Shown: piece after piece, positions 31,901-53,767 of the stretch | Layout of the letters: each line of letters begins with the position of its first letter | How positions within the stretch are numbered: the stretch's first letter is position 1 | Assembly: GCF_964204645.1 (NCBI RefSeq) | Contig: NC_134031.1 | Coordinates: 8,494,001 to 8,558,000 of the forward strand | Direction: 5' to 3' | DNA: 64,000 nucleotides | Source: Tubulanus polymorphus | Taxonomy: Eukaryota; Animalia; Nemertea | Notes under the pieces: model-generated | The model's input: only the letters and a program-made list of their open reading frames with translations | Told to the model about the DNA's origin: nothing | The model's database searches: none | Position numbers and translations under genes: made by a program

Positions 31901-34900
31901 ATGATTCCTTAGTAGTTTGAAAACAAACATTACATGATGAATTTCCGAAATTCGAAGTCAAGTGTTCAGACTCGGGGATATCTCAATTGGTCAGTTACTG
32001 ACCATCATGGTGTCACCATTGTGGTCTATAGCTCAAATGAAACATGTGGAACCGACGAAGGGGCCCAAAAGCGTCAAAAAGTCATTTCCTGGAGTGACGT
32101 GATCCAAAAATGCCCTAACTGGAAAAGGCAGTCTCTCAATTGGATGAAACCAAATCGGACAGGACAATTAAAATTTGGGAAGGTCACAGGTAGTGGTCTT
32201 TCTACGAAGCCCACGCGGTGAGCGTATTATTATGAAATCTTTTTTTAAACCACCGGTAGCCCGCTAAAATCTTTCCTCTTTCCTCTTTCTGTTCTTCTCC
32301 CCCTTCTTCCCATTTCTTCTATAGAATTGTATAGAAAATAAATTCATAGATATCATCTGATATCATATCCGTTTCTTTGCTAGAATTTTAGATGATATCA
32401 GAATATTAGCCTGCCCAGATTAGGCAAGCCGCAACTATATACTTTTTTTCTGAAAAAATAAGCTTTAGAGAAAGACTAATTCCTTGCTTAAAAAAGAAAA
32501 AGCAATCTTAATATGAAAATAAACAAGTTGTCTTTTGAGTTCTGATATGGCTACCGCCTGCTTTTCGATTATGCGCATCTTCTTTTTCCCAAAATATCAA
32601 GACATCATATATATAGTTGCGGGACCCATCAAAAATTAGGAATATTTTATAATTCCATGTTTTGATGATAAATTGTGACTTATAGCCAACCGCTTACTTT
32701 CTGGTAAAATAAATCGTTACGCTGTAGAAATGCGCTGTTAGGATTTACGAACAGAATTAGGCCTAACATCCCCAAATGCTTCATTCATAATTCAAAATTC
32801 CGTATAAATGTTAAACATTCGCGCTCGCAACTTGATTTTTTTTGTCATGGTATTTTGATGAGCTGAATTTTTGGAAGTTTCAATTTCCCCTACGCCACCA
32901 ACTAATGATTTGTCTTGGTCTTGTATAAAGTTTTTTCATGAAATGTTTAATATTAGGGAAATTTTGTTCGTCACCTAAAGCAATTTTCAAAAATTGATTG
33001 GATATCATAAGGTGATTTCTAACAATGCGGTTCGTAGGCCTACAATCATCCTCCCAGATTCGGTATTCTTCATGTAAAATGAGATGGCTCCTAAATTCAA
33101 CTGCCTTCAGTTTGACTTTGATTTCTTTTGGGAAACGGCGATTTCATTTCAAAATTATATAGGCCTTCCTCGTTATCGGAGTTGCAATATTTCTATTTCT
33201 TGAAGTGACGGCTTTGTATGCGGACGATATGACAATCAAAAATAGGAGATAATCATATTTTTCTATCTACTAACAGAATAATTTGATTGAACTTCTATGG
33301 TTACGCGTTTTCGAGCGAATATGCGCCGAACCTTAACGCCGAACCAATCATTTTTCAGACTTCCTATTATATCATATTCAATCGTGTGGTAAGTTTATAT
33401 ACTGGCATGTGTTACTGCAACTAGGCCTGGGGAACAGTTGGATCACCGAAAAAACGTATCTGCTGCAGATTATCTGAGCGCTTGTATTTTTTTTTCAAAT
33501 TTTCTGGCACGACCGAGACAATAGGCCTACTCTAGTGCTCAGCTGCTCAGAATCAAATTGTTGCAAAAACATCAACAAACACTATCAAGTCGATGCTCAC
33601 TCAAATAAAACGTACACTATCTTCAGTTTGTGACAAGAATGAACAGGGAGATATGTACCTTTATAAATAAAGATACACGCAAAATTATAATTTTTGAAAT
33701 TGATAATGATCATATATAGTAATTCATGGGACTAACTACGCTATAGTGTACTCCCTATTGAATTCAAAATACATGTATGTGTTAAACTGAGGCAAACATA
33801 CCAACCCTGCCTATGCCAATTAATACATATCACATCACTTTGGCTAGAGTTGAATGATCGATAAATCCATAACAAAATCACAACTAAAACAAAATTCAAA
33901 TTTGAAGTCAGATCGCTATGGGGTCCTGAAAGAAGCACCCATATCATAGAAAACCATTGTCATTATCGAATGTGGGCTATATATTCTGTAGTATAAGTGT
34001 GTGTCGGTGTAATGATTAGGCCCGGATCAGGTTACTGACTAGGAAAACCCACATTGAAAAATTAAGAACCTTGTTCGACTATGATTTCTTTTATTAATAT
34101 TTCATGAAATAAGTTGAGTGATAATATAGACCTTTGAAGAGTAAGACTTTTTACACTAATTGCAATGATTAAGATTTTACATAAGGCTTTATCCATGTTT
34201 GAAGGATTGTTCAATAACAGTTACATAAGCTAGATAGAGGAAATTTAAATATTCAGGCCCAGCTAGTAAGCCTGTCTTTAAGGAGCGCAATTGGATTGAT
34301 TAAGATAGGATCCATTGCGCGTTGATAAAGAATCAATAGATATTGCGGCATTCTAAATTAGATTATTTAAAAACCGCAAGTTTAGGCGTTCAATTGGTCC
34401 TAACATTCATTAGAAACATCAGATTAAAATGATACAGCGTTTCGATACTCGTCATAAAGTACATTGGCTGCATCAATTTGGTGAATTTTATATGGCAAGC
34501 ACAATTTTTCTAAATTTTTAAATGTTAAAGGAAAGTTTAAGGTGCTGGACCAATAGTTATCTACACATTTGTTTGGGTCAAAAATATGCCTCCACAAGGT
34601 GAATGATATGGCAAAAATTAAGAACATTCCAAATCAAGACACATGACAGTCATTTTTGGGGGAAGATGTAGACTTTTCCCAACATAATTCGAGGATTTAA
34701 TTCCCAAACTTTCATTTTTCATTGCGCCTGCATGACCTATAGTCAAGTAGTTTTCACAGCTAGAATCACCAGCCACAGACGCTTTGTTCAAAAAACCCAG
34801 GTTGGTTTATAATATAATCTATGAAATTTGATATGTAATTTGCTTGCTTATTCTTGATATAAATGAACTACCCTGATATTTGGTTCGGTACAGAGGCACG

Positions 34901-35734
34901 CAAAGTAGGTTCATGGCTGGAGGAAAGTAACCTTCATGTCAATGAGATTCACGACAAACATTTTCAGCAGTTTGCAGTTCTGAGGGAATTTTTGCAAACC
35001 GTAGGATCAAAAGTCTGGATATTTATCGGTCAACATGGTAAATAGGCTGAAAATTAAATAGTTCATATTCAAGACAGCGATGACTGACACCATTTTTGTG
35101 AGTGAATAAATGCAGGCTTATTTCGCGTTTGAAGTTTTAGTGGTTTACCACATTGCATCTTAAAACTTTATACATATAGTAAAGTCCGCTGCACAAGGCA
35201 CCGAAAAAAAGTTTTTTCCTCGTGAAAAACGTTTTCGATGTGTCTTGTTATGCCGTGTGCAGCGGACTTAACTAATCTTGTTTTATATTTTAATAACTTA
35301 ACGTACCGGGTGTTTTTTGTCATTTATATAAAAAAGCGTGTTCATGATTATGGATAGTTGGGTTTGTCAAAATAAATTTAAAAAGATAAGTTCTAGTTAT
35401 TTGTGGTTAAAAGTTGGTTTGATTTTCAGGTTTTCATATCCCCATATTTCACACGAATACAAAAGGATCGGTTTAACCATAGAACCACACAGAAACTTGC
35501 TCACTTGAGTAAAAGACTAGCTCAAGGAAACATTTTTAGGACCTTGTTTTGGACGTTTTCGTTATTTCTGTGGGATTCGCTTTAAATTATGCATGGCTAC
35601 ATCCCTGTAGCATGTGAATTAAGTTCCAGAGTAAATTTCCAGACGGCAGATGAAGGCAATGACATAAGTTAGGGGACCCTAAATACTGAAACAAAAAATC
35701 CAATCAAAACGTCTACTAAGTTTATTCTATAATA

Positions 35735-35915
35735 CAGTGGAACTTCGTAACAGCTAGGTTCATGGGACCAGAAAATATGTTCGTTATTACCGATAGTTCG
35801 TTTCGTTATATCCAGTATGAAATTAATAGTTATCTTTCTTACTTGGGACAAAATTCTATATTTGTTATATCCGATGAGTCGTTGTTTTCGAGTTTGCTAT
35901 AACGAGGTTCCACTG
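35735..35915. mobile_element. Tc1/pogo-type MITE
   Basis: TA-CAGTGGAACTTCGT ... ACGAGGTTCCACTG-TA. Confidence 0.8.
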
Positions 35916-38510
35916 TAATGCACGAATAACTGACGAGGTAAACTTAGCAAAAGAGTTCAATATAAGTTCCACAAAGCTAAACAGTTCAAATATCAAAACG
36001 ATACAATTTATTATAAAAAAAACAGAATTATCGGTTTTCCACTTAAAGCATTATTAAGGAATGAAAACTAATACAGCGTATCAAAAACATATATAAAAAG
36101 AAGCGCTAATTAATACAATCTTCGATAATCTTCTGTACAATATTTCTCTCATGCACATCGGTTTTCGAGAATTAATTGATGAAATCGTATACCAGTAGCT
36201 ACAGCTTGTTGGACGTCATTAGTCTGAACAGGAGGCATGAAAGAAGGCATGTGAGACCATCTATCTTGGTTTAGTAATGCAAGATAAAAATTAATATTGC
36301 ATTAATATATAGCATACTGACCCACTACCTGACTCAGCTAAATAACTGCATGTATTCAAAATAATATTGAAAGAGTTTTTTGATACTTTGGATGTTCGTA
36401 GTAATCGAGAATGGGTGCGCAGCGGTAAATCAAGTATTCGTCTAATGGCCGTCCTCCATGCCTTAAAAATGTGTCATACATACATACAAGTAGACATCAG
36501 TCCATTGGTAATACATTTATGAATCCCTATAAGTAATCTGTTTAAACTACTAATAATATATATATGTACATGTACATGAATTTAGGCCACAGGAGGACCA
36601 TCTCAGGTCAGTCCAATTCTGATGAGCCCTTGAGCGATACAAATGTAATAAAAATATCAAGATAATTGATTAAAGCGTTTTCAAAATCTCCCTTCAAAAC
36701 TTCAAAAGTGTGTAAGTGCTAAGTTCAGCAATGCCATATTCCCAATATGGACGGATGGATGAATGCGAAGATAGACAACGGATGAACAGTGAGCACAATA
36801 ATCTGGTGGGACTTAAGTCTCAAGTGGGCTAAAAAGGAAATATCCTGATGCGGACGTGATTTCTATCGACAAAATATTACAACCATTCACAGAGGCTCTT
36901 CGACTTTGACATTCCGTCAACGATATTGGATAACACTTAACGACGTATGTCAGCAGAATTGCTGAGAATCTACAAATCAACTTTTAAGTGGCCTTATATT
37001 GTAATTTTCAATCTTAAAATTTGCCAATCTGTTGTACCGCTCAGCTGTATTTTTTCCTAACGTCGCAGCACAGACTTCATGAGCTTGGTTATCACTGATA
37101 CCAAAATATCTTGCCACCAGGGATCTAATTATGTGTATCCTTATTCTTGCACGTACTGATGAAGAACTGAAAGATGAGAGAAATCAAATAAGAAAAAACT
37201 TCATATCTATCTATCCATATATGTATAAATTTGAATCCTAGATCTGTACCTAACAAACACATTTGAGTGAAGACAAAAATTTAAATACATTGAACTGGTA
37301 TACCAGTCATACAGGGATTCAGGAATTGAAATTTTAATACAATCATTTACAAATGCAATGAAATACCTACCTTAATCTCTTTTGAAGAATTTTGGATACT
37401 AAATGAATTGGTGCCATGAATGGAACTTCCATTTGTGAGTAAGAATACACCATTCTGAAAATGATAGTTTAACGGCTTTAAAGCAAATATTTGTACTGTT
37501 GACCCAACTGTATTTTGAAGGTTAAATTATTGGAGGGTTGTACAAACAAACCGTGAGATATAATGTTTTATTCAATGATGTTTTAATATTTGAACTTGAA
37601 TACCGAGTGCAACATGCTCTTTCAGTAGTACGAAACATTGCTTTACCAAAATAATCTGTGAGAGTGTTCAAATATTTATGTGATTTGAGTAAACTTATAT
37701 TGGATGTACTGTAAATTTTACAAAAAGTGACTCAGCAATCAGTTGAACGACACAGCTGACATTATTTTCGACAACACCAGCACCATACGCATTATCAGAC
37801 AAAATATTTTCCTCCTGCAAGCTGAATGCATAGAGCAATTATCTTTATCGTTAAACAATTGCAAATAACAAGAGAAACTAAAATTATGGCACAAATGGGA
37901 TGTCATAATGATATGAATTTCTCTAGAGTCCATCAGATGATGATTACATGAACTTGGCACCTCCATTTTCTGCCTTAAGCTTTAGATCAGAAATTCATAG
38001 AAATTATGGATGTTGATTATTAATTCATCCATAATATGGGTCGCTACTATGGTCAAGATTCAGATCTGTATTAAATCCCTAGATGTACATGAGCTGATGT
38101 AAATAAATAAATAGAGAATCTTGACTTTCAAGTGCTTTTTTTCAAAAATTAGCCAAATCGATCAAATTTTCAGAATCTCCTGTCATGAAACTTTGTTCTT
38201 ACATGCTTGGTAGACTGAATATCTTCTCAATATCATATCTGAGCTCAAGGAGAACCTGAAAGTATAATAGAGAGTTGAAGTGGTGTACATTTGAAAGTCC
38301 TATAGACATATTAACGGGACACCATGCCACTGCTCAATGGGATCAAAATCTATGAAAGACTACAGCAACACCGTCTGCTGACTAGTTGAAACCGATATGT
38401 TTAATGATCTTAACTAATATTCAATAATAGAAAGTAGGAATAGAAGATCTATGCTATACTGAAGTTGGCTATAGATTAGCCATCTGAGGGCTCAAGACAT
38501 ATATACTCAC

Positions 38511-39925
38511 TTTCCCATTGCTGCGATACAAATATGACAAAGGAACCATTCTTGAATCGTCTACATCGTTTTCATCATCAATGAGTTTATTCAGCTTTTG
38601 CGAACAAATCATACATACAATGCTATCAGACATTCTAAATTTAATGAATAAATACATAACATGTAAGCATCAAAGAAACTGAATTTACAAAATGTAATGT
38701 TAACCATGAACTTAAGATTAATAACCTCGAGCTACTTTTGGAAAAACAGATAATACACGCAGAAGTAATGGACAATCTGACCTCTTCCTTGACCTAGAAG
38801 AAACAAAAGCAAAGAGACCAAATTAGACATTTCTGTAGAATAACTACTGGCAGGATCAATTTGACAATTATAGGTTGATGCTATAAATGATGGACAGTTT
38901 GTAGTAGTACGTATATATGATTTTACCTGATTATAAGCACTGAGCTTTGTTTCGACGATATGTATGGGACATGTGTATGTTCTAATCAAATGACAATCTT
39001 TTTCTTCCAGACCGACACATCCAGGATGAATGAGCCATTTACAACTTACATTCGAACATTCCATAACATGATAGTTGCTATAAAATAAGAAGAGAGTTAG
39101 TTTTTGAATCTATGGAGTGAATAGTTTTCAATTAAGAATTATTGATATCTTCAATGTATCATATTCAGTAACGGTATACTGGTTTGAATTTCATACAATA
39201 ATGAAGGCAAAAAGAAATTATAAAATGAAATCCTTTGATTCAGAGTTTAAGTGGTTTTGTTTCAGGTAAAAAAGAAATAACATATCTTGCAATGTAATAT
39301 AATGCAGTTACGTATTTTGTATTGGTCTTGACTGGAAGTACAACCATAATAAGTCACATATAAGCTATGTGGGGGGGGGGGGGAGATTGTAAGGTGAAGC
39401 ACATGTGAGAATGAATAAAGGGCTAATATGCGCCATGAGTGGTGAAGACCTCTGCAGATCCAAACACAACATTCTTCAAGGGTGGTTCATTCACATAGAC
39501 ATGTAGATTAAATGATATCATTAGGGCGTTTTTAATATACAATTTCAACAATCAAGAACCTTTGGCATTTTATACCAACTCCTAGCTTTCTGATGCATAA
39601 TTTCAGTGAAATTTTTGGCTCAGTCATGTAAATGTTGACAATAAAAAGATGTGCTACATCTTCAAGTCAATCAAGATCAAAATTACTGCAAAGATGACAA
39701 AACGTTCCAACTTCACCACAAGAGTCATCATTATTTTTTCGGTAATCATTTTCCCAAAAAGCTAGTTATCCATTGTTACCATTCTTTCATGTTCATGCTG
39801 CTGATCACTTACTCATTTTTCTGTGCATTACAAAAGCACAATAATGGACGTTTGTTGTCTTCATCCGTTAAATTACGCAGTATATCGAAATTTTGCCTTC
39901 TTTTCTGGACATTTGTACGCTTTAA
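38511..39925 (-). CDS. PHD finger and CxxC..CxxC exons of the integrase gene
   Basis: Exons 39925-39813, 39077-38927, 38793-38726 and 38634-38511 splice in phase: LLCFCNAQKNDNYHVMECSNVSCKWLIHPGCVGLEEKDCHLIRTYTCPIH...CIICFSK...VCMICSQ. Confidence 0.75.
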
Positions 39926-41740
39926 CTTCAGACAAATGGGGTTAAATCATTAATAAAGCATACCATACCACTATCAATTTCTATTTTCACAACTCATGCG
40001 CATATGGCGCTTTATTAGATTTTTCACATACCTGGGAGACCGTTCGATAAGTTCTTCTTCTAAAAGTGGACAAAATTTTCAACAAAAGAAATAAAATAAT
40101 GTATTGATTTTCAAAGTCATTGATATAGTGCTGTGTAAGGATAACCTTGTTAGGAGATACTTAGCAATGCTGACCGATTTCCAAGGTCCAGAGTCTAATG
40201 ATCTAGTTTTCTCATTAATGCTATAGCAAAACTCAATCAATGCTAGAATTCGTTTATATTTTCCCTTCAAAGAATTCACCCAAATTACTTAGTGATAAAA
40301 CTTAATATCATTTTTTAAGTCAATGTACAACACATCTGGTTTTAGGTATCAATCCTGCATACGTATGTTGAAGCATGAATGTAAACCATCTAGTTTGAAG
40401 AGTTTGTTGAGTTATTGATTTTCTATAAATTTGATTAAATTTACTACAATTGGTATCCACTGCACAATTAATACTTACTCTTTACAAATTTTTCTTTTTT
40501 CAATATGTCCATCATCATTGTTCTGTTTCTTATTTTTCACTGGTACTAGGCTAAAAGAAAAATACACAATACACTGGTAAAAAATGAAATGGAAATATAT
40601 GTGTAAATTAGTTTCAAATTTGTTGATACATTTATGGCATGCATCAACTTACAATTCATTCATATTTAACTCATCAAGCTGATACTGCATAAAAAAGAAA
40701 GAATCAAACGAAGATCATGTTCAAATGCAAATCATCTCAAAATACTCCTTTGATAATAATAATAATGATGATTCACATTAATATGTTACAGTGCAAAAAG
40801 CATTCAGCAAAACTTTGATAGGAACAGCAAAAGTAATATGTCTATAATGACTAAATGTATTAAATTCAATTCCTATTATTAATTTGACACAAGAATGAAT
40901 GATAAAATTGATTGTTAAGCGCCATATTTCAAACATTCTTTCATATGGATCTGAAGTGTAGAACACATACACTAATAAAAACAGAAACAATTAAAAACTT
41001 TACCTCATTGACGATTTGATCAACACAATGTCTGATCTCTTCGGGTACAGTTAAGTCATCCCTAAAATGGTGAAAAGTCATCAATTTAACTATCAACTTT
41101 AAATGTTCCATGATTAGGATAAATAAAGTAAGATATTTTCCTGGCCAAAAACTTACAGCATTTCAAAACTTGTTTCCGATGAATCCGAATCGTGAACCGC
41201 AAGGGACTGACACTGTAGGCAAATGAAAATGAACCAGGGGTCCAGTGACACCATACCCACTTAGTGAAATGCATTGCAACCTGACAATTTCAATATTCAA
41301 TGCCCCTGGTAAATATGTATAGAAACCAATGTCCGCGAAACTCACCACAAACATAGAATAAGTCATGGGCTACAATTTTACGTTTTCTGATTGTGTTTTA
41401 CAAAATGTGTAAAGGTACTAATATTATAGGGAACATTATCAAGTATATTATAGGGATTTGAAATGGTTGCATTAAAATAATCTTCAAATATAATGCTAAT
41501 ATCTCACATTTAATCATCAACATATTTCAAGTTCTATGTACAGGATATTTGTATTTAGTTACAGATCACATAAAAGACTTTTCTGTTTGTCTTATTAACT
41601 GGTTAACAAACGTTTGCTAATTATACACTAGTGTCTCAAACTTATCATAAACTTATTCAATAATAATCTGTAGGTAGCTTTCATTAACACCATTGACTAT
41701 ATTAGTACGTTATATGTTTGTAAAATGTAACCAATTACTT

Positions 41741-44700
41741 ACGTTTAACTGTTCTGTATTTTTGTTCATAACATGATTATTTCTAAAAATCACAGATTGA
41801 TATCAAATACATGTAATTCTTCTTTAGATGATTGAAAGCGAAAATCACATCGAATGACCAATAAGACATACTATATAAAATATGAATAAGATGTAGAATG
41901 CAATGTAAACTTACTCGCATGACTTTCCTGAGTGGCAACTAGCTGTACAAATTACACCCCTCTTCTTACACAGACATCTTAAAGTCGAGCAATTTGCTTT
42001 GCAGTGGCATCGGCTAGCTGGTTTCAAAGAGTGTGACATTGCCATCGCAGCTGTTCTTATCGGCAATTTGGGAACTGATCCCCACCCAGCGACAGGAATA
42101 TCAAATTCCCCAACAAACCGTTGCAGCACATCTGCTCGCAAGGCAACATCTAAGACTCCGTACTTGGTTCTAAAAATGAGGATTAACAGAATAAAGAATA
42201 GAGCTGTTAAGACTTTGCTTTACGATTTATGAAATTATCTGACAAACCGTATTATATAAAAGTTTCCATTCTTAAACTTTTTCACTTGGACTACCACACC
42301 AGGGAGTCTACGTAGATCTATTTTGTGGCGGTCTTGCTCAGGAATTTTCACCGTTACAAAATCCCCAACTTTGAATATTAGTTGTTCTTTGTATCCCCTT
42401 TTCAACATCATTTTTGCGCCGTTTAAGGAGGCAAGGTTAGCAGCCATCCTAATTTTTTGGTGAGCTTCCTTAGTTGCTAGCTCATTAGCAACCTTAACTC
42501 TCTTTATTGGCAGCTCACTAAAATCAAATCCCTAGAATGGAAGTGGTGCATTGGTTAGCCAGCTTAAAATAAGGCCAAATGTAGTAAGTAGAGTTTAGGT
42601 TATAGCAAAGTGACAAGTTTTGTGCATTGTTAAAAAGGCTTACTTGCGAAGTGGTTGAGGCATTTGGTTCCATCTGAAAAAAGTTGAGTGATATACAGAT
42701 ATGAAAATTGGTAAACACTGCACTTGCAATAAATGTCAATTTTCTGACACTTGAAAAATTGTTAATTTTTTAAATATACATCTCTTAGAAATGCCACAAA
42801 GTTTACATTAATGAAATACTGTAAGTATCCCTTTATAAAATGCAAGTTGGCAGTTATCTTTTCTCAGGACAAGATTTCAATGAGCCTTATTCTGCAGGAG
42901 ACGAGATAGACATATTTGTATTTAAAATTAAATCGAATATATACACAAGATAATCAATCAAGCATGTACACACCGTAATATCTTCATCACTCTGAATTGT
43001 TATGGCCTATGAAAAAGAATATGGATTACTGATACTTGTTAAGTATTATAAAAAAAACATGCATTAAGATAATATCTACAGCCTGGCTCTGTTTACAAGA
43101 TGTTGATTAATTTTGAAAGGTATTTTGACTTTGTGATACTACTGTATTTGAAACTTAATTTCTTACTACACCCTACAGGGCCATAGGAACGAATTGTGGC
43201 CCATAATGACGGCGTAGCAGGCACAAAGCACTAAATGGTCATAAAATTTTGAAAAATTATATCATTTAGGTACATTCTGAGTACTTCCTGGTTGAAATTA
43301 GGAATGATATAAGCTCACAGTTTCACCATTTCTGCCACTAGGTACTATGGAGACCTACCCTAGGCATGTAGGAAGTCATAGGCAAGAGTCAGAAAATGGG
43401 GGGGGGGGGGCATGGCTCCCCGGTTCCTACAGCCCTGCCCTAAAATAGATTTTAGTGAGTATTAGTACATACTTCTGCATTGCCCTCCTCTTCGTCATTA
43501 TGTTCATTTGACTATAATCAAATACAATTTCTTATAAGGACTGAATAATGATATAAATACCATTTGCTGAAGTAACTACAAATTTTACCTGAAGTGCAAT
43601 ATTTGGGGGTTTTTACCCATACACACATTCATAGGGGGTACATTTTATTCGTGTGGAATACGTAGTGTTGATCATATCTAAAGAAGCAAAAAACATTGAG
43701 CATATAGGGGAAGCATATTATGAATTAATCAAGATATCGTGTTCAATTTTACTTACACATAATTCGTGGTAAATAATGATGCCATGGAAATTCTCCTTTA
43801 CCAGTGAAAGACGCTTTGAATGAGGCAATTTTATCAGCCACGATACGATGACCCCGTTCTACTAAGCCCTGGCTCTGGGGATGACGAGGTCTACCATGGA
43901 CAATTTTACAGCTGGAGGGCCATTCAGACAGAAGATCACCCAGTTCCCGGTCAGAAAATTCACCTCCATTATCACATTGAAGAATTTTGGGCAGCCCAGT
44001 AAAACTGAATAGGATCCTGAGAGCATCTTTCACATCAGTCGCAAATTTCCCCTTCAAGGGCCACAGAAAATGAAATTTGGAGGCATGGTCAATAGCATGC
44101 AATATGAAGCGATAACCTTCTGTTTCTTGACGTTGCATATCAATCAAGTCAACCTGAAATGAATATACATGTATGAATTAACGATAATAGTACTCAGACC
44201 TTAAATAAAAGTTATGTCTTACCTGAATTCTTTCGAATACATTTTGGCTAATGATCGGAATGACTGGGGCTCTGCCAGTTTGCGATGATTTCAGTGTGCA
44301 CACTTTGCATTTTTTCAAGGTATTCCTTACATGAATTCGAATGACACCGAAGTAGTTTTCTTGAACCTGAAAGTTGATCTTTTGAATAAGTGATTAAAGA
44401 TATGATTAACTAAAACCTCAGGGAATAATTTTACCTTTTTAAATGTAGCATTCTCTCCACCATGCCCAATAGCCTCGTGACAGGATAATATGATTTGATC
44501 AAAATCTTCCAAAGGGATAACTCTGAGTTTCCTTGAAACCTGAAACAACCCATTTGGAGCAAATGAATAACTTCTGTACATACTGCAATAAAATGATATT
44601 TTCCATGTAAGATACGTACATCACTTTTGCATGGTGCAACTACATTCTTATCACCGTTTTCCTCCTCTTTTAAAGTAAAACCTTTGGTTTTGACCTGCAA

Positions 44701-45157
44701 AATAAGACGAAGCATCACTTCATAAATCAGTTCTATTATGAGAAAATTGTAGTGATACAAGACGTCAAGCATTCACAACGAGAACATTTACCTGATGTCG
44801 GAATTTGGCTAAGCTTTGGCTGTTGGGAAAATAATTCTTAACATCTGGATGCATTGGGTTTTCAAGAAACTGTTTGACAACATCCAGATATTCTTTATCC
44901 ATAACTGAGCTATTTTTGGCTAAAAAATGAAACACCTCTATTCACATTCATACATAGGCCTAATGCCTTATGAAACCAATCATTTTAATTTGTGGCCTAG
45001 CAGTAAGGAAAAAGATTCATTCCCACCAGGAAATCATTTCTGATTTTATAAAACAAAGGTATTTTATAAAGCAAAGGTGAGAATGTATCTGAATAACCCA
45101 TGCTATCTTAGCTTACCTCTTTTTTTCACATCAGATCTTTTCACATCATCTGTAATT
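41741..45157 (-). CDS. KRBA2/SCAND3/GingerRoot-type retroviral-like integrase (H2C2 finger, DDE core, SH3-like region, CXC)
   Basis: Exons 45157-45117, 44919-44792, 44694-44620, 44539-44435, 44366-44223, 44153-43757, 43677-43589 and onward. Motifs CHEAIGHGG, CKVC, IQVDLIDM, LQCDNGGEF, GRPRHPQSQGLVER, TPYE, FKVGDFV, CHCKANCSTLRCLCKKRGVICTASCH. Confidence 0.9.
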
Positions 45158-47797
45158 CTGTTATAAAATGAATGAAAATTTATTGTAGCGAATAAATTGG
45201 CCAGCTTTTAGTCTCAAGTATCTTACGTAATAAAATGAACAATTTTGTATCCTAAAACAAACTGAACCATAAAGCGAATCTTAGGTTTAACCACCAGCAT
45301 TTGTGGGCATTGAATAATATTTTGTACCAATTGTGCTCTTTTTTTAATCAATAAAGTTTTCTTGGTTAAACTAGTTAAACTGACAACTTCGAAAAATATT
45401 TGACAGCCAAAATTTCAATATTCAACACCCCCTGATGAACAAATACAGCAATAGATGAATGACACTGACTTTTAAATGCCATAGTGCCAATCAATTGAGC
45501 ATATATACCATAATATTCCATGGTTAACATATAGCAGAAGCCATCGCCTTCTAACTCAACATAACCATACCATATCATGGGCTACCAATGTGCAATTGAT
45601 TGGGTTAACAAAATATGCATACGTACCAATATAAAGGGAAAATATTAAATTTAATATCAAACTATCCGTGGTGGGGAGAGAACAAAAGACCACAATTCCG
45701 AGCAAGGAGATGTATCCTACGATAATGCAGTCAATTATTAAACATTAAGACTATCAAGACCTGTTGAAATTTTTCCTGAAAAACCTTTTAGAATATAATA
45801 AGTTTCATAGATAGACTTACTTAGATGATGCTTTCTTAGCAGAGTCATGTGCTTTCTCTGAATGATCTATAGGATTTGTATCTGAAAATCTATCATTAAC
45901 ATGGGATGAAATTCTAGTTTTCTAATGAGCATGTCTCAGTGGAAACGTCATTTCTCAAAACATACTTATCATCATCTGGCATGTGATCACATGACACAGA
46001 AGCTTTAGTGCGACTGTTTGAGGCCTATCAAATATAAAATGTAGAGGGTTGACAAAACTATAAACTACATTCAAATATGGATGCACACAAGTGAGTTCAA
46101 TATGGATGCACACAAGCGAGTGTAAGAGGAAAAAAATCAAGGGCTATAATCTTTAAAAACTAGGTGCGCAATCAGAGTACGTCTGGAACCAGTCCAGTCA
46201 TTCAACCAAATGCAGCAATGAACATCGATGAAACTCCATGAACTAGAGGACTGCAGATAAAAGCATCGGTAAATGACAACAATGCTTAGGCCAACACATT
46301 TTCAGGGATTTTTCACATGCTCTTTCTTCTTTCTCACGAAAAGGTCAGACTCTAAAAAAAGAGCAATGTCTTTAGGGGGGTGCACGTGCCCTCTGCGCAA
46401 ACCCCTGGATCAGCCGCTGACATATCTATATGTACGCACATATAGTGATTGTCCCTATGGTGCCAGTGAAGCCAATGTAGCATGTCCAAAATATCAACGA
46501 AATCCTATGCGCCAGAATCTAAAGGCTTCTTCGTCAGGGCGTGGCTATCTACAAGGGTCCGCCATCGTCAAACAGTCCCGGGGAGTGGTAGTGAAAAGGG
46601 AAAATGTCATCCTCTGAAGGTTGATGAATGAATAATGGCCGACTCCAGGAATAAAAGGTCTAAAAGGGGTAAACTAGTGTCCGAGATGAGTGCGAAATCT
46701 TTCCCAGGTGACTACATTATCTAAATGAAGTCACTTGACCAATCAGGACGAGTGTCTGCCAGGTACTCAATCAAGTCAGGGTCCTTGACAAGATACAAGA
46801 TCAGTCATCCAAACACCGGCTCCTACTTCTCTGGTCCTCGGAGGTGTAGTGTCATTCCAAATGCCTCCAGCACATCACTACTGCAACCAGCCTCTTTGAC
46901 TTGCCCTCACTTACTATGGTCTCACACATAAAATAAGCAAATCAAAAGAGAATTAGTCTTGAAAGATAAACAATATGAATAATGAGAGAAATCTCACAAT
47001 AGATTCAGCCAAAAATGTTAAGTTCTTGAGTAAAATTCTATATACATCGGTATAATCTGATGATGGCTAATAGTATTTAGCATATATGTTGCTCAAAATA
47101 TATACCACTTTGCTATAGAACTTTTCATTTTGGGCTGATTCTATTCTGGGATTTCTCTCGTTAGGCATTGGCTTCCTCCTCTCCTGACAGTGAAAACGAG
47201 AAGAATTATAAACTTAACATATATCGATTATTATTTCATAGTTAACTTGTTCATTTTACAATTTTACAAATAAAATATGCGAATAAAAAAGAATACAATT
47301 CATAAATGAGTAGAGAACTATACATTCATCTTAGTTTAATAATCCTATGTACATATTGCACATGACTGGATACAAGTAGGCCTAGCCTACTGAAATTTAG
47401 CATGATACACTACATCCTCGCACTAATAAAGTAGAGTAAAATGGGCCGCCAAGTTCCACAAAAAGTTTTAACTCTTAAATCGATTTAATTTCTTCATTAA
47501 TTCAGTTTATCTTTTTTTGATCGATTTTGGCTTTAATCCTTTTTGTGAAACTGGGCCCCAGATGGATGGAATAATTAGAAATATACGTACCCGGTAATAA
47601 CATTCTAATCCTTAGCCATTACATACAATTTCATAGCGATACAATAATCTAAAGGTGTGAAAATGATCAGACTCCATTGCAAGATTCAAGATTCAAACAA
47701 GTCACACTGATCTCCACATGAAACCGACCATTTTCCGACACCCGAAATACAACATCTAAACCTACAACTCATAAACACATACAGGGGCGGCTGGGCG

Positions 47798-48341
47798 ACG
47801 TGTAAAATGTTTCACATACCTGAGGATCGGGTTGGTGTGAATTATCTGCTGTAGTCCTTGTCTGAAAAATAATATTTAGACTCATTACAAATATATATTG
47901 CATCCTAAATTCCAAGTTATGACACATTTTTAGAAAAATCAACGTGTAAAATGTTTCACATACCTCAAGATCGGGTTGGTGTGAATTATGTGCCGTAGTC
48001 CTTGTCTGAAAAATAATATTTAGACTCATTACAAATATATACTGCATCGTAAATTCCAAGTTATGACACATTTTTAGAAAAATCAACGTGTAAAATGTTT
48101 CACATACCTAAGGATCGGGTTGGTGTGAATTATGTGCCGTAGTCCTTGTCTGAAAAATAATATTTAGACTCATTACAAATATATACTGCATCCTAAATTC
48201 CAAGTTATGACACATTTTTAGAAAAATCAACGTGTAAAATGTTTCACATACCTGAGGATCGGGTTGGTGTGAATTATGTGCCGTAGTCCTTGTCTGAAAA
48301 ATAATATTTAGACTCATTAAAAATATATATTGCATCCTAAA
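47798..48341. repeat. 144-bp tandem repeat (~3.8 units); each unit is a candidate 42-nt exon plus 102-nt intron on the minus strand
   Basis: TTTTTCAG|ACAAGGACTAC...CAG|GTATGT at 48293-48252, 48149-48108, 48005-47964 and 47861-47820. Confidence 0.85.
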
Positions 48342-48381
48342 TCCTAATTACCGTTGTATCGTGCATTACTGGCGAGTTTAA

Positions 48382-48679
48382 CCCTTAACCTTCTGGCAGC
48401 AAGATCATTTGCATGTTGATGAAATTAAACTTCCGATTTTTGAAAGAGGGGGTACACTGGGTGGGGTCATTTTTGGGGGCCCAGCGCGAAAAGTGAAATC
48501 ACTTCCGGGTTCAGATTCACGAGTATAGGCAGTTGCCATGTCTTAAGAGGCTCAACGCGCTGCGAGGCGCTTGTGACATAAAAACAATCTTTTAATGCGA
48601 GATAGGCCGGGCTATTGACTACAGTTGCCTACGGCAGATCCCCAGTGTGTCGACTCAGTAGCCTGCAGCAAGTTAAGGG
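48382..48679. mobile_element. piggyBac-like MITE
   Basis: TTAA-CCCTTAAC ... GTTAAGGG-TTAA. Confidence 0.75.
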
Positions 48680-48820
48680 TTAACTACATAAAGTTGAATA
48701 TTATATGACAAAATAAGAAAGAACACATACTGGTACTTTTATATAAAATAGCATGTAAGCATTCTGGGATAGGACCCAATCCTTATTGGCTCTCAATACC
48801 TAAAATAAAGATTAAGTTAC

Positions 48821-51800
48821 GTTATATTGTGCAAATGAACGGAACTAACTTCTCTGTCCTCATTTGATATTATGACAAAAATATACAGGATGTATGCTTG
48901 TTTTTCATATAGAGCTTCTGTGGTTCCAAAGGGTTTGTCCGCAGCGATTATTTTATGATAATAAAACTTTTGAGTCACTTTTGCCTGTAATTGCACATTT
49001 TGCATTGGTTTTTTTTATATAATGTGACAGAATGGGCATGAACCAGATTAAAGAATTAGGTGCTGCGTCAGAATGGTGATTCGCCATAGTTATCTGACTC
49101 ATGTTCAAGACATAGCTGCCAGGTGTCTGATGAATAATCAATAAATGATAAAATATTCCTGGTTGCAAATGATCAATGGATTTACAGTACCTTACTGTCA
49201 TTTGTTTCAAACCATTTACCATCAATATCGCAAACAAAAGATATATAATGTCCTCCTTCCAAAGAAGAGCCTTGATGAACCACAACACTGCAAAGTTTAA
49301 AATTCTGAAAAATATGTGACAGTGTTATTTATGTGCAGTATTCCTAAAAAACTAGAATATCTTCAGTAAATGAGCATACCTCGTTGTGGAAGCTAAGAAC
49401 TTCATCAAATCTCACAAAATCATTTCTTTTTTCCAATGTCTTACTGAATCTTAAAAGGACAAGACAGTCTATTAGTTATAACTCCACCAATTAATTCTAG
49501 AGATACTGTTCATACCGTATGCCATGCGTAAAATACCATTCTACAGGGTGCCTCAAAAAATGTGTTTTCAGTTACACAAAAGCAGTTTAAGCAAATTGAC
49601 AGATTAAGTATTTACCTGTTAATTTGAATAGCTAAACATTCAGGAGCCTTCAAAGGTTTAGTAGATTTCCTTGCAACCTTTGATTTGCAATTTCAATGAA
49701 AAATGATGGAAATGAAATCATAGCTAAAAGATAATACCTATAAATATGGAATCAGTACTTATGATCACTACATGAAATAAACATAACAAACTCACTGGGA
49801 ACACTCATAGTCATCCAGTTCCTCACTACAAAAATATGAATTAAGTAACGAGACAAGGGTTGTGACTCCTTTTCCTTTATCCTTCTGAAATACAAAGAAA
49901 ATCTCAAATGTCATATAGGAACTATTTATAGGAAACATATAGAAATATTCAGCGGTTTAAGGGACCAAAAACACAGCTACACACCCCAAGTGATAGACTG
50001 AGGTTTGTGAATCCATCAGTTTGTGTTGATTCAGTAGAACAGGATCTACAGATGACTGAAAGAGAAAGTCATAAAATATTCAAACAGGGCTTACTGATGT
50101 GAAAATTAAGTGTAGTAAAAATGAATGAATCATTGCTTGAAAAGCTTTGCTACTTAAAATACCTTTTGTTTGAAGAGAACCATGGAAAAACTTAACAATC
50201 CGTTTAAAATCAGAACTGAAAAAATAAACACACATTATATTCATCATCTATCTAGCCTCAATTTTTTGATAACTATAAACATAATTGCATTCGTTCATTC
50301 GCTCGTTGCTTCATTCATTTTGTTTACCTTGAATTTTCATCTTCAATTCTACTCATCCAACGAATGAAGAACTCATGGGCATCACACCGACGTCTTGAGT
50401 AGAACCCTATATCTAAGATAAAATGGGGTGAAAATCAGTTTGGTTCAGTAAAGGAAAGTTGAAGAAAGAAGTGAGAAAGAAGCAAAACCACATTTTTTTC
50501 CAGTTCACCACGGTTGTGTATGAACACCAAACCATCCAGCTCTTCATTATAGAACAGATAGGCAAGGGTCTCATTCCTCGAGACATCACCTACATATTTT
50601 GATCATAGTAGTGTATAACATACATGAATAGCATAAAAGTCATGAAGCGAGGCAACATATATAAAACAGAAAACAGATGAAATAGGAGTGAAATATTCAA
50701 TTTGCACTGGTCATTGTGGTCACCTCAAAGTCTTCAGATACAGAAGCAAGTGGCAATGAGGCTCTAGTCATTTAAGACCCTACTCAAAATTAGGGGATAC
50801 CTATGGAATTTCCAAGAAAATAACGCCTATGTGACTGTCATTGGTTTGGCAAGAAATCATACTATAATTAAATATCATATCAAAAGTGTTTGATACAGGC
50901 TATTCCTAGTATAAGCCCATCTGATCACTTTTCCTGAGATAGGCACATAAAATGTTTTCCTAAATCGCTGCAATAAGGTGAAAAAAGACTTTTGGTGCAA
51001 CCACACAACTAGGACACCACGCCTACTGGCGAAATGCTTGACAATCTGAAAATAATCAAATACCACATTATTCCGTTATTCGCCTGGTGATCATACTCAG
51101 AAACGAATTATGTACCTTGAAACTCACCCAGCACGAATTTCAACACATTATAATGGCAAACCATAATCACTACCATTAGGAAGCTACAGGTCTCAGAATT
51201 CAGGGCACAAGTGACCTTTTTTTGTCAAAATATCAAGGAACTTCATTGAAGCATATTCAAGATTTCCCAGCCAGCCATCTGGAATTTGATCAAGCCAGTT
51301 TTTGGCTCCAGATGCATCTAAAGTAGCTATTAACCTAACATCAAAACAAACCATTGAAGCATCAATTACAGTTCAATTTTCCACAAATTACTGGGGCCTG
51401 TCTACAAACAATGAATGAAAAGTGAACAAATTAGGCCCGCTAGGATTTAAGTCCCAAGTGGGTTAAAAAGCATTTGCATTGTAATGAGACATAATCATGT
51501 GGATTACTTAATACTTAATACCCTGAGATGAAGCCTATATGTGTAGAGTATTTACATAGACAATGTGAAGCAAAGAAAATTGATGAAAAACAAATAGGAA
51601 GATTATATAATATACCAACCATTTTGCCATTATTCTGTCAGGAAAAGGAAATTGAAATATAAACATTAGGTCAAAAACACTTTAATTCTCAAATTACACA
51701 ACTAATCTAGTTTACGAATTAGAGATATTTTATTTCAAATGACTAAAAATTGCAGTATAATGAGAAATTTTGATCAAAGTAAATACTTACTAGGCAAAAG

Positions 51801-51907
51801 ACATTTCATGGCACTAGGATTCACTACATGACTAATATTTGCTGATGTACTTCGCAGAACTAGACACAGATCCTCCAGTGTCTGGGTGAAATTATCCTGC
51901 TTTACCC
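48821..51907 (-). CDS. Ubiquitin-specific protease (peptidase C19/UCH) domain exons
   Basis: Exons 51907-51791, 50406-50328, 50215-50163, 50055-49985, 49884-49796, ~49690-49616, 49449-49380, 49304-49191 and 48984 onward. Motifs CDAHEFF, FHGSL, ICRSC..GFTNLSL, YFCSEELDDYECSHC, APECLAIQINRF, VVVHQGSSLEGGHYISF..GKWFETNDSK, QAYIL. Confidence 0.88.
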
Positions 51908-53767
51908 CTAAATCAAAGATGTTATGTTTCAATTCTATGAACAATAGGAATGCTTGGCTGTGAGACGATTAGACAAATTAACTATCATCCCACCCTTAAG
52001 GCTGGCTTGAGGCTGATTAGCGGGATATGAGATCCTCCCAGTTGCTTCCCTGCTTTTGTCCGGTTCCGCTTACTGGCAACTGCACTGGATCACATGGTCA
52101 TGAGCATTTTGAGGATAGATTTAAATTATTTTGAATTGCGAAATATATTTCCAGTTGAAAAGCAGTTTCGTTAAGACTTTTATCTTTCTGATTCTGTTTT
52201 GAATACAATGTGTAAGCGACATCATATAAAGATGGCCGCTCACTACGTAATTCTACCAATTTCGTTTCTAGATCTTTAGTCCAGTCAACTGCAATGCTGG
52301 ACGTTTGGTTTGCGTTTGAAACTACTTGAAATTACCGGTAAATATTTGTGACATGATACAAATGACACTAATGTAACAATCAAAATTTGTACTATGAACA
52401 TTCGGTCTCTAATTGGCTGGTATTCCTGCGCTCAGTTCCATCGCGTCAAGTCAGGAGAGGGAGGTTGTCATACATATAGGATAACATATATACCGGTACC
52501 CATCCTTTATATGGGCTAAGCATAAAGTCAAATTATGGCTCCTCACCGAAATTTGATGATGATGATTAGGCCTATATATCCAATCATAGAACTCATCATG
52601 AGCTACAATTTTGCAAAGTGGTGACAATTTTGCAATTGTGGTAAAAATATGCCTAGGTAACTTGACTAAAATTGAACCGATATGCATTAGGCTATTCCTC
52701 AGGCATTGATATTCACAGGGCTCTGCCCCAAATGACATCCAAGTCAAGTCACGGGGCCGTATATTTTGGTGCAGCTGAAAAGTAGCGATACTTAAAATAA
52801 TATATATAGATGATGATAAATATTTCAGTTAGATATATCATAATAGCATAGGCTATATGGTATCTATAGTTAGTCTGAATACCGGTGGTCGTTTCACGAA
52901 CGCCAGTTAACTTCGAATTCGAAGGTGATAATTAAAAATTCCTCGAATTAGGCATAGATCATTTGATGATTAAATCTGTTTCACTAACGCAAATTAGCGA
53001 AAAATTAACCAATTCAAATTATCTCAGATAATTCTGAATTAGTTGCCCATAATGCATTAGTCCTATAACATGAACAAGGTTTCATTCATATCGTAGGATT
53101 TTTTGGTTGTACAATGAATTGTATAATTGATCGTTCCGTATTTTCTTTGCAATTCTTTCTCCAATGAGATTTTCAATAGGCCCTAAATCTAAAAATGTGT
53201 AGGTGATATATGATAAATATCTTAATTTGCATTTTTGAAATGGGCATCGAAAATTAACCTAAAAATTTTTATTCGAATTGGGCAACTAACCCAAATTAGA
53301 GGCTTAATCCCTGTATGTAAAACCGGGCCCAGGGAGTTAGGGTTAGTTTAAGGGTGCGTTTTACACTTAGAGAGATGAAAGGGTTAGGGTAGGGTTGAGA
53401 TACGATACGTTGAATGCTATATGAATTGAAAACTTACAGCCAGATTGCAAGAACGTATTTTATATTTATATTTAGAGGATATATACACTGGTCCGGGTTC
53501 GAATCCCGCTCTATTTTCTCTAAATCTGTTCAAATTTTCTTGAATTTTCAAAGTTTTGCATTTGCGCAGCATCAATTAGGCAATCAAAACAAGTCATTGG
53601 AAAAATGACATAGTCTAATAATAAGAAAGGCAGCCAATATTTTGCCAATGCGGTATTATTCCTCTTAACACTATTTTGCCAATGGCGCGTTCTGAATGAC
53701 TAATTGCGGCTGCATAGGAAAGTTTGGAGAACAGAGTTAGCCTAGACAAAATAAGAGCATAGACTAG

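What the first reader, a model, noticed from the sequence alone, without database searches (positions are those of the whole stretch)
36977..51907. Hidden ~15-kb intron-rich gene joining a USP deubiquitinase, a DDE integrase, CXC and a PHD finger
Seen: about 30 small GT-AG exons on the minus strand. Phase-consistent chains encode a USP/C19 domain (51907-48821), linker exons (48293-47820, ~47181-47104, ~45881-45821), a KRBA2/SCAND3-type integrase (45157-41741), a PHD finger (39925-38927) and a C-terminal region ending TGA at 36977. Established: Ginger-type integrase transposons contain introns and can carry Ulp1, OTU or PHD domains. A USP-class protease on such a transposase is not something I know of. 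Inference: a chromatin-reading, ubiquitin-removing transposase or a domesticated gene. The USP-to-integrase and integrase-to-PHD joins are plausible but unproven.
Basis: partly seen in the sequence, partly recalled or inferred. Interest (0 to 1): 0.86.

Follow-up and report, generated by a model that had tools for sequence, protein, structure and literature searches.

The report
Giant Ginger2 transposon carrying a deubiquitinase
The region is a damaged copy of a very large (about 23.6 kb), recently active cut-and-paste jumping gene of the ribbon worm Tubulanus polymorphus. Its intron-rich transcription unit encodes a complete ubiquitin-removing enzyme (USP) ahead of its integrase-type transposase, a pairing I did not find described for this transposon group.

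Summary
The small minus-strand GT-AG exons are real. Seven USP introns appear as spliced contigs in one public run, and 16 integrase introns match RefSeq models.

The locus is not a hidden host gene. It is one of at least 8 copies, about 99% identical, of a 23.6-kb DNA transposon. The element has imperfect TIRs that start TGTTR and 4-bp target-site duplications (CAGG, CCAC, AATA). Its integrase has H2C2 and DDE motifs and lacks YPYY and GPY/F. These are the hallmarks of metazoan Ginger2.

The USP has its catalytic Cys, His and Asp.

The window copy is dead:
- the left terminus is lost;
- a 625-bp insertion and frameshifts break exon 1;
- one splice acceptor is mutated;
- there are two in-frame stops.

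The USP-to-integrase join is in frame (phase 0 to phase 0) through strongly predicted mini-exons, but no RNA shows it. The integrase-to-PHD join is weaker, because a strong RefSeq exon ends the frame first.

None of about 280 integrase relatives carries a USP. Other notes in this scan report USP-bearing transposons elsewhere in this genome.

The parts
32253..56149 (-). Truncated, decayed copy of the ~23.6-kb Ginger2-type transposon (gene on the minus strand). The first 109 bp of the left end, including the left TIR, are missing.
   Evidence: Megablast against the copies on C5, C1, C4, C11 and C77 gives 98.8-99.5% identity. Ends were defined on C5, C1 and C4.
56093..56149 (.). Right (gene-proximal) terminal inverted repeat, ending ...GCGCATAACA (read inward TGTTATGCG...). 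The window copy has a 12-bp internal duplication. GCC-N5-RGAAT motifs repeat near the end.
56150..56153 (.). TCGG, the right half of the presumed 4-bp target-site duplication. The left partner is lost with the left end.
   Evidence: The full copies show CAGG, CCAC and AATA on both sides.
55863..55928 (-). USP exon 1, first piece, with the ATG at 55928 (MMFLGSTAW...).
55238..55862 (.). 625-bp nested insertion of a high-copy short repeat that splits exon 1 in this copy only.
55087..55237 (-). USP exon 1, second piece, holding the Cys box (GLANYGQSCYMNS). It is frameshifted in this copy.
54279..54826 (.). 548-bp foldback element (249-nt arms) inserted in an intron of this copy only.
51791..51934 (-). 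USP exon 2, predicted. AG/GT sites and phases fit exons 1 and 3. No RNA contig covers it.
   Evidence: X4 depth here is 0.
50328..50412 (-). USP exon 3 (QDAHEF box). The donor is RNA-supported and the acceptor is predicted.
50163..50215 (-). USP exon 4
   Evidence: X4 joints on both sides
49985..50055 (-). USP exon 5 (first CxxC of the zinc ribbon)
49796..49884 (-). USP exon 6
49616..49690 (-). USP exon 7. Its acceptor reads AA in the window and AG in the other copies and in the reads.
   Evidence: (49691 T>C)
49380..49449 (-). USP exon 8
49191..49304 (-). USP exon 9, the His box (GGHY ... NDSK)
48731..48799 (-). USP exon 10 (...AYMLFYIKVP). The acceptor is RNA-supported. The predicted donor at 48731 ends in phase 0.
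47820..48293 (-). Four 144-bp tandem units. Each is a predicted 42-nt phase-0 mini-exon (TRTTAHNSHQPDPQ) followed by a 102-nt intron. The second mini-exon ends in a stop in this copy (48110-48108).
47106..47183 (-). Predicted basic linker exon (ERRKPMPNERNPR...), phase 0 to 0.
45966..46024 (-). Linker exon L3. It starts in phase 0 and is the first exon of the 5'-partial RefSeq model.
45821..45889 (-). Linker exon L4
45117..45157 (-). Exon I0 (basic stretch)
44792..44919 (-). Exon I1 (integrase N-terminal region)
44620..44694 (-). Exon I2
44435..44539 (-). Exon I3 (the His pair of the H2C2 finger)
44223..44366 (-). Exon I4 (the Cys pair of the H2C2 finger)
43757..44153 (-). Exon I5, the DDE catalytic core (D, D, E all present)
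43589..43677 (-). Exon I6, with a TAA stop at 43615-43613 in this copy (Gln codon in the other copies).
42644..43511 (-). Three small acidic exons: I7 43511-43473, I8 43006-42974 and I9 42673-42644.
42248..42531 (-). Exon I10, the SH3-like C-terminal integrase module
41915..42169 (-). Exon I11, with the Cys-rich CXC cluster conserved in this integrase clade
41004..41061 (-). Exon I12, which ends in phase 0
40915..40950 (-). RefSeq terminal exon (strong acceptor). It ends the frame after 11 codons and competes with a join to the PHD exons.
39813..39925 (-). Predicted PHD exon 1 (basic stretch plus CxC). The acceptor is weak and starts in phase 0.
38927..39077 (-). Predicted PHD exon 2 (C..C..H..C...C..H)
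38203..38255 (-). Candidate exon that links PHD exon 2 in frame to the last exon.
36977..37166 (-). Candidate last exon (strong acceptor, 62 codons, TGA at 36979-36977). No recognisable domain.
32253..36976 (.). Left 4.7 kb of the element. No ORF with a recognisable domain was found on either strand.

Best explanation
Window 32253-56149 is a dead copy of a ~23.6-kb cut-and-paste DNA transposon of the Ginger2 kind in the nemertean Tubulanus polymorphus.

The family has imperfect ~45-bp TIRs that begin TGTTR and makes 4-bp target-site duplications. It amplified recently: there are at least 8 loci, about 99% identical.

One strand is almost filled by an intron-rich unit of at least 35 exons. The unit starts about 200 bp inside the right terminus.

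I propose that it makes one long protein with these parts, in order:
1. a complete, catalytically competent USP/C19 deubiquitinase;
2. a disordered linker, built from tandemly repeated 14-residue mini-exons plus basic exons;
3. a KRBA2/SCAND3-type integrase (H2C2 finger, DDE core, SH3-like and CXC modules);
4. in a longer splice form, a PHD-like finger.

Shown:
- the element's boundaries and copies;
- USP splicing for exons 3-10;
- the integrase exon structure;
- intact catalytic motifs.

Inferred:
- the integrase part excises and inserts the element;
- the USP part removes ubiquitin from the transposase itself, from chromatin or from repair factors at the cut sites, and so protects transposition, as proposed for the OTU and Ulp1 domains of Ginger1 and the VTD/OTU domains of Helitrons;
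- the PHD finger, if it is included, reads histone H3 tails.
For: Element:
- Collinear copies on C5, C1, C4, C11, C77 and C8 are 98.8-99.5% identical to the window.
- The ends are identical in C5, C1 and C4. The flanks differ and are bracketed by CAGG, CCAC and AATA.
- Metazoan Ginger2 is defined by TGTNR ends, 4-bp TSDs, and H2C2 plus DDE without YPYY or GPY/F (PMC2836005). All of these were checked here.
- NCBI names the models SCAND3-like or KRBA2-like. PMC3575427 derives those genes from Ginger2.

USP:
- Pfam UCH matches.
- The Cys box aligns with USP8 and the His box with Ubp6/USP14.
- Seven introns appear as spliced X4 contigs that are absent from the DNA-like runs X1 and X2. The spliced frame is open.
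- There is no close host paralogue of the His-box exon.

Join:
- USP exon 10 ends in phase 0 and linker exon L3 starts in phase 0.
- All the strong candidate exons between them are symmetric and open in phase 0.
- Exon candidates of that strength occur 0 times on the element's opposite strand and 0 times in 64 kb of other window sequence.
- One RefSeq model is 5'-partial and open through the linker exons.

Decay:
- Disabling mutations differ from copy to copy. Only the C5 copy keeps all 27 tested exons open.

Independent repeat of the arrangement:
- A second family, 40% identical in the integrase core, has UCH boxes and an integrase collinear at three loci.
Against: - No RNA joint links the USP to the integrase. 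My single read-laying run covered only 48400-54280.
- RefSeq gives integrase-only models that start at MDKEYL, MAFKTK or MSAADPG on near-identical copies, not fusions.
- X4 shows no contig on USP exon 2, and one contig runs unspliced upstream of exon 3. So even the full USP is not shown on one mRNA.
- A strong acceptor at 40950 leads to a stop after 11 codons. The main product may therefore end before the PHD exons.
- The PHD match is below Pfam's cut-off.
- None of about 280 relatives of this integrase carries UCH, so the fusion has no precedent in the clade.
- Placement in Ginger2 rests on structural hallmarks and database names, not on a tree with reference transposases.
- Ubiquitin-cleaving activity and mobility are untested.
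Confidence: 0.65

Rival explanations
1. The transposon is the same, but it carries two or three separate genes on one strand: a stand-alone USP that ends ...LFYIKVPVCVLSYFVI-stop at about 48701, an integrase transposase with its own promoter and start, and perhaps a PHD gene. The USP acts in trans as an accessory factor.
For: - The RefSeq models begin at the integrase and never include USP exons.
- USP domains normally end just after the AYxLFY motif, and the frame of exon 10 reaches a stop 9 codons past the predicted donor.
- X4 has contigs at 48450-48684, downstream of exon 10.
- No relative of this integrase has a fused USP.
Against: - The three RefSeq start sites disagree on 99%-identical copies, and one model is flagged 5'-partial with an open frame. 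That suggests the starts were chosen without support.
- The spacer holds very strong, symmetric, phase-0 exon candidates on the gene strand. Nothing comparable is found in control sequence.
- The linker exons are hydrophilic or basic, like an interdomain linker.
- The listed X4 pieces at 48450-48684 have depth 4-5, as retained-intron pieces do, against 14-30 on the spliced exons.
Confidence: 0.25
2. The USP exons are a passenger. They were captured from a host gene, as in Pack-type elements, have no role in transposition, and are merely carried along.
For: Integrase-type DNA transposons such as GingerRoot often carry host gene fragments (PMC6839031). The clade otherwise lacks USP.
Against: - The domain is complete, with catalytic Cys, His and Asp. 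It opens the transcription unit next to the terminus, and it is spliced into an open frame.
- The genome has no close host paralogue of the His-box exon.
- A second, diverged integrase family in the same genome shows the same USP-then-integrase order.
Confidence: 0.08
3. It is a domesticated host gene, a KRBA2/SCAND3-like integrase fused to a USP, and no longer a mobile element.
For: NCBI names the models after the domesticated vertebrate genes. The structure is intron-rich, like a host gene.
Against: - There are at least 8 near-identical copies on different chromosomes, with TIRs, TSDs and unrelated flanks.
- The copies carry independent stops, frameshifts, deletions and nested insertions.
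- The window copy itself is broken in four places.
Confidence: 0.02

Closest known systems
Ginger2/TDD DNA transposons of metazoans (Bao, Kapitonov & Jurka 2010, PMC2836005)
   Same: TGTNR termini, 4-bp TSDs and short TIRs. The transposase is a Gypsy-like integrase with an H2C2 finger and a DDE core, without YPYY or GPY/F motifs.
   Different: - Known families are 2.8-6.7 kb and are not described with protease domains. This one is 23.6 kb.
- It has at least 35 exons, an N-terminal USP, a tandem mini-exon linker and PHD-like exons.
- The three TSDs seen here (CAGG, CCAC, AATA) do not show the AT-rich RTATAY preference.
Ginger1 transposons with OTU or Ulp1 (with or without PHD) domains (same paper)
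   Same: An integrase-type transposase combined with a cysteine protease of the ubiquitin/SUMO system and sometimes a PHD finger. Introns are present. The termini are TGTNR and the TSD is 4 bp.
   Different: - In Ginger1 the protease is C-terminal and is OTU or Ulp1, not an N-terminal USP.
- Ginger1 integrases have YPYY and GPY/F motifs and strongly prefer CCGG targets. None of these is seen here.
- Ginger1 elements have at most 4 introns and are at most 7 kb long.
KRBA2 and SCAND3/ZBED9 (vertebrate genes derived from Ginger2, PMC3575427)
   Same: The integrase is of the same type. RefSeq names the Tubulanus models after these genes.
   Different: Those genes are single-copy, domesticated and without termini. 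This one is a multicopy mobile element with TIRs and TSDs.
Deubiquitinases on other transposons: OTU and VTD domains of Helitrons/Helentrons (PMC9741609), and a peptidase C19 domain on an IS5-like transposase in Trichomonas vaginalis (cited in PMC2836005)
   Same: A transposon-encoded ubiquitin-removing cysteine protease, presumed to protect or promote transposition.
   Different: The transposition enzymes and, mostly, the deubiquitinase classes differ. No case in an integrase-type (Ginger) element was found in the papers searched.
USP-bearing Mutator and other elements noted by this scan in the same genome (s1-500192, s1-506667, s1-492753, s1-487458)
   Same: Same organism and the same kind of pairing (USP plus transposase). 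For the Mutator case another agent reports a single spliced mRNA.
   Different: The Mutator cases belong to a different transposase superfamily. The Ginger2-type notes are unchecked first readings on other DNA. I did not test any of them.

Membership tests
Ginger2/TDD | Termini follow TGTNR (5'-TG...CA-3') | tested here: met
   The left end reads TGTTG. The right end read inward is TGTTA, identical in four full or right-end copies and TGTTC in the C4 copy.
Ginger2/TDD | 4-bp target-site duplication (metazoan members) | tested here: met
   CAGG (C5), CCAC (C1) and AATA (C4) flank both ends. The window copy has lost one end.
Ginger2/TDD | Terminal inverted repeats of about 50-180 bp | tested here: inconclusive
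   Only about 45 bp align, at roughly 70% identity with indels. Known members range from 45 to 297 bp.
Ginger2/TDD | Transposase with an H2C2 zinc finger and a DDE core | tested here: met
   Pfam Integrase_H2C2 and rve match on P0001 and P0158. D157, D216 and E254 are present in P0158.
Ginger2/TDD | Lacks the YPYY and GPY/F motifs of Ginger1 | tested here: met
   A pattern search of P0158 found none.
Ginger2/TDD | Integrase clusters with Ginger2 transposases in a phylogeny | not tested
   No Ginger1 or Ginger2 reference transposase was available. The only proxy is the KRBA2/SCAND3-like naming of the models and their relatives.
Ginger1 | YPYY and GPY/F motifs; CCGG or CCGT target; C-terminal OTU or Ulp1 | tested here: not met
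   The motifs are absent. The TSDs are CAGG, CCAC and AATA. No OTU or Ulp1 match was found in the exons scanned.
GingerRoot | 6-bp TSD, 100-150-bp TIRs, mostly TA...TA termini | tested here: not met
   The TSD is 4 bp and the termini are TG...CA, against the definition in PMC6839031.
USP / peptidase C19 (Pfam UCH PF00443) | Cys box and His box with catalytic Cys, His and Asp/Asn; a match above Pfam's cut-off | tested here: met
   The His-box exon scores 38.9 bits and the Cys-box exon 24.3 bits, against a cut-off of 23.9. The alignments to USP8 and Ubp6 keep the Cys and His. The QDAHEF box, the zinc ribbon and the AYMLFY motif lie in the spliced frame.
USP / peptidase C19 | Cleaves ubiquitin conjugates | not testable with these tools
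   This needs an enzyme assay.
PHD finger | C4HC3-type zinc-binding pattern; a Pfam match above cut-off | tested here: inconclusive
   PHD_NSD scores 18.7 bits against a cut-off of 23.9 on the second half alone. The Cys/His pattern is complete only if the two predicted exons are joined, and its last ligand is His.
Domesticated integrase gene (KRBA2/SCAND3-like) | Single syntenic locus without TIRs or TSDs, under purifying selection | tested here: not met
   There are at least 8 loci with TIRs and TSDs, and each has decayed independently.

The most novel reading that the evidence does not exclude
The element makes a single protein of about 1,200 residues in which a USP deubiquitinase is the N-terminal domain of an active Ginger2 transposase (with a PHD-bearing splice form), and the deubiquitinase activity is needed for transposition. 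Mutator and other superfamilies in this worm also carry USP domains. Together this would point to repeated recruitment of USP by unrelated transposons against a ubiquitin-based host control of transposases.
Probability: 0.3. Interest if true: 0.8.

Novelty: new variant of a known kind. Interest (0 to 1): 0.62.

Why it matters
Cysteine proteases of the ubiquitin and SUMO systems (OTU, Ulp1, VTD) recur on unrelated transposons, but their role has never been shown.

This family adds the USP class to integrase-type elements, in a young family with at least one copy whose tested exons are all open. That gives a natural system for asking whether deubiquitination is part of the transposition reaction.

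It also stretches what a Ginger element can look like: 23.6 kb, at least 35 exons, and a linker apparently built from tandemly duplicated exon-intron units.

For annotation, the RefSeq 'SCAND3-like' and 'KRBA2-like' genes of this worm are transposon copies, not host genes.

Tried and rejected
- RNA proof of the joins. Only one read-laying run was allowed and I spent it on 48400-54280. It confirmed USP splicing but could not reach the USP-integrase spacer. Run X5, the only run guessed to be RNA, held nothing.
- A RefSeq USP or fusion model. Searches with P0001, P0158 and the integrase region of P0207 found only integrase-only Tubulanus models and no UCH-bearing relative. The USP exons are too short for the length window of that tool.
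- The look-up of encoding contigs returned nothing for P0001 or P0158, because the genome's own records are withheld.
- The second USP+integrase family. Only the integrase parts (L028-L030) were read, and the family-1 Cys-box exon does not detect the family-2 USP.
- Empty-site proof of the TSD. The C5 flank is unique in the genome, so there is no paralogous empty site.
- A home-made exon-chain predictor recovered all confirmed exons but over-predicted elsewhere, including inside an RNA-confirmed intron. I kept only the candidates with strong splice scores.
- Pfam Znf_SCAND3 does not match the CXC cluster. In relative P0160 that domain lies elsewhere. The Tesmin CXC match is insignificant (E = 0.31).
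- Nothing recognisable was found in the left 4.7 kb or in the last exon.
- Rejected readings: segmental duplication (unrelated flanks, TSDs) and a domesticated gene.
- The joined spliced model was never searched or folded. Exons were searched one by one by reference, and database proteins were used as returned.


Full report
**What is in the window**

The window is G000:C7:8494001-8558000. RefSeq names on exact-matching proteins identify the organism as the nemertean Tubulanus polymorphus.

On the minus strand between 36.9 and 56 kb, stop-free pieces carry these recognisable motifs:
- Pfam rve, 3.2e-9, on 43752-44177.
- Integrase_H2C2 on the exons upstream of it.
- UCH, 9.7e-10, on 49185-49328.
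- A PHD_NSD match below cut-off on 38735-39109.

**It is a repeat with transposon ends**

The integrase-core exon occurs at 100-99% amino-acid identity on C5, C11, C77 and C4, and broken on C1. The USP His-box exon occurs at 7 places and the PHD exon at 5. Where several of these exons occur at one locus they have the same order and strand. A deletion derivative on C8 places the USP next to the PHD exon.

Megablast of fetched copies shows that the window from 32253 to about 56150 matches them at 98.8-99.5%.

In the C5, C1 and C4 copies the similarity stops at the same bases. The left end reads TGTTGCGTGCC... and the right end reads ...GCGCATAACA. The flanks are unrelated, and the same 4 bp stand on both sides: CAGG, CCAC and AATA. 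The two ends align as imperfect inverted repeats of about 45 bp. The full element is 23,635 bp.

These features match metazoan Ginger2 as defined by Bao et al.: TGTNR termini and 4-bp TSDs, and an integrase with an H2C2 finger and a DDE core (D157, D216, E254 in model P0158) but without YPYY or GPY/F (PMC2836005).

They do not match Ginger1, which has YPYY and GPY/F motifs and CCGG targets. They do not match GingerRoot, which has 6-bp TSDs (PMC6839031).

NCBI names the models SCAND3-like or KRBA2-like, and so are many relatives. Those vertebrate genes are held to derive from Ginger2 (PMC3575427). I could not build a tree with reference transposases, so that criterion is untested.

**Exon structure and its support**

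Laying public runs on 48400-54280 gave seven joints with CT..AC ends, which is GT..AG on the minus strand. They appear in run X4 only. X1 and X2 cover the stretch contiguously, as DNA would.

The joints define exons 50215-50163, 50055-49985, 49884-49796, 49690-49616, 49449-49380 and 49304-49191, and an exon that starts at 48799. Read in phase, these exons give one open USP frame. It contains the QDAHEF box, two CxxC pairs, the GGHY His box and the AYMLFY motif.

Pfam UCH positions 1-42 match about 265-390 bp inside the right end of every copy. On the C5 copy the frame opens with an ATG about 208 bp from the terminus and reads GLANYGQSCYMNS. This scores above the Pfam cut-off and aligns with the catalytic-Cys box of USP8. 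The His box aligns with Ubp6/USP14.

A predicted second exon (51934-51791) fits in phase between exon 1 and the QDAHEF exon. X4 has no contig on it, and one X4 contig runs unspliced upstream of exon 3. The 5' part of the USP is therefore inferred, not shown.

For the integrase side, four RefSeq models of the family were returned by searches. One of them, P0157, maps to this window without a single mismatch. All 16 of their introns are GT-AG with good consensus.

**The two joins**

*USP to integrase.* USP exon 10 has a donor at 48731 that ends in phase 0. The first linker exon of the 5'-partial RefSeq model P0151 (46024-45966) starts in phase 0.

I built splice-site matrices from the 23 supported introns and scanned the 2.7-kb spacer with them. 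The spacer contains very strong sites inside a 144-bp tandem repeat. Each repeat unit is a 42-nt exon candidate, open in phase 0, encoding TRTTAHNSHQPDPQ, followed by a 102-nt intron. A basic 78-nt phase-0 exon follows at 47183-47106.

Candidates of that strength occur nowhere on the element's other strand and nowhere in 64 kb of other window sequence. The number of repeat units varies from 3 to 5 among the copies, and the frame stays open in all but the window copy.

Any combination of these exons keeps the USP and the integrase in one frame. This is good indirect support for a fusion, and I put it at about 0.7-0.75. No RNA joint was seen.

RefSeq starts the integrase separately, at three different places on 99%-identical copies. 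I read that as start sites picked without support rather than as evidence for a separate gene.

*Integrase to PHD.* Exon I12 ends in phase 0, and the PHD exons form a coherent in-frame chain: 39925-39813, 39077-38927, 38255-38203, then 37166-36977. However, the strongest acceptor after I12 (40950) leads to a stop after 11 codons, and that is how RefSeq ends the C5 model. A short main form and a longer PHD-bearing splice form is my best guess. I put the chance that the PHD finger is on the same protein at about 0.4-0.5.

**State of the copies**

I tested 27 exons in six copies.
- **Window:** the left terminus is lost. Exon 1 is split by a 625-bp insertion and frameshifted. The acceptor of exon 7 reads AA, while the reads and the other copies read AG. 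There are stops at 48110-48108 and at 43615-43613.
- **C1:** a mutated acceptor, two frameshifts and a stop.
- **C11:** a frameshift, and its left part is replaced.
- **C4:** a stop and an internal deletion.
- **C77:** a stop, and the contig ends inside the element.
- **C5:** all 27 exons open, and both ends present.

The lesions differ from copy to copy, as expected for transposon copies decaying after insertion. This rules out a domesticated gene.

**How unusual it is**

I examined about 280 relatives of this integrase for precomputed or scanned Pfam domains. None has UCH. A few have OTU, some have the SCAND3 zinc finger, and one has a PHD finger.

The SH3-like and CXC tail is conserved in the clade: 33% identity over 154 residues with P0160, E = 3e-20.

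The literature I searched describes OTU and Ulp1 (with or without PHD) on Ginger1, a C19 domain on an IS5-like transposase of Trichomonas, and OTU and VTD on Helitrons. It describes no USP on a Ginger element.

Within this genome, a second family with a 40%-identical integrase core shows UCH boxes and the integrase collinear at three loci. Notes of this scan report USP-bearing Mutator and Ginger-type elements elsewhere in the genome. I did not test those notes.

**Verdict**

The domestication half does not hold.

The single-polypeptide claim is probable for USP plus integrase and open for the PHD finger.

The joined model was not searched or folded.

Noticed in passing
G000 C5:12458446-12468552; C31:35835-43956; C3:14447416-14464471 (L028-L030 hold only the integrase parts): A second, diverged repeat family. 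Its integrase core is 40% identical, with no obvious H2C2 finger in the ORF I read. A UCH Cys box, a His box and the integrase lie collinear on one strand at the C5 and C31 loci; at C3 only the Cys box and the integrase were listed.
   Followed up: partly
G000 C4:26324953-26325882, C2:24203117-24204046, C3:8471009-8472409: Full-length UCH matches without introns inside very long open frames: 1758 aa twice, with identical scores, and 791 aa. These may be further transposon-borne USPs.
   Followed up: no
window 54279-54826: A 548-bp foldback element (249-nt arms, 95% complementary) is inserted only in this copy. The same element sits at a different place in the C11 copy.
   Followed up: partly
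window 53916-54290 and 55238-55862: A high-copy short repeat, with read depth about 30 times that of the element. It is present in an intron of all copies and is also inserted in exon 1 of the window copy.
   Followed up: partly
window 47798-48342: The 144-bp tandem repeat looks like a duplicated exon-intron unit (a 42-nt exon plus a 102-nt intron). The number of units varies from 3 to 5 among the copies.
   Followed up: yes
element positions about 82-128 on C5, C1 and C4 (window 32253 is its midpoint): A 19-bp-arm palindrome (GATTTTAGCGGGCTACCGG ... CCGGTAGCCCGCTAAAATC) lies near the left end. The window copy is truncated exactly at its centre.
   Followed up: partly
window 31521-31918: A 109-bp tandem repeat (3.7 copies) lies just outside the truncated left end.
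   Followed up: no
proteins P0012, P0093, P0124, P0137: Long relatives of the integrase carry Cys...His stretches between the core and the CXC tail. By eye these look OTU-like, and in P0137 USP-like. Pfam gives no match.
   Followed up: partly
proteins P0175, P0310: Integrase-like proteins of endogenous crustacean nimaviruses fall among the relatives of this integrase (36-50% identity in the core).
   Followed up: no
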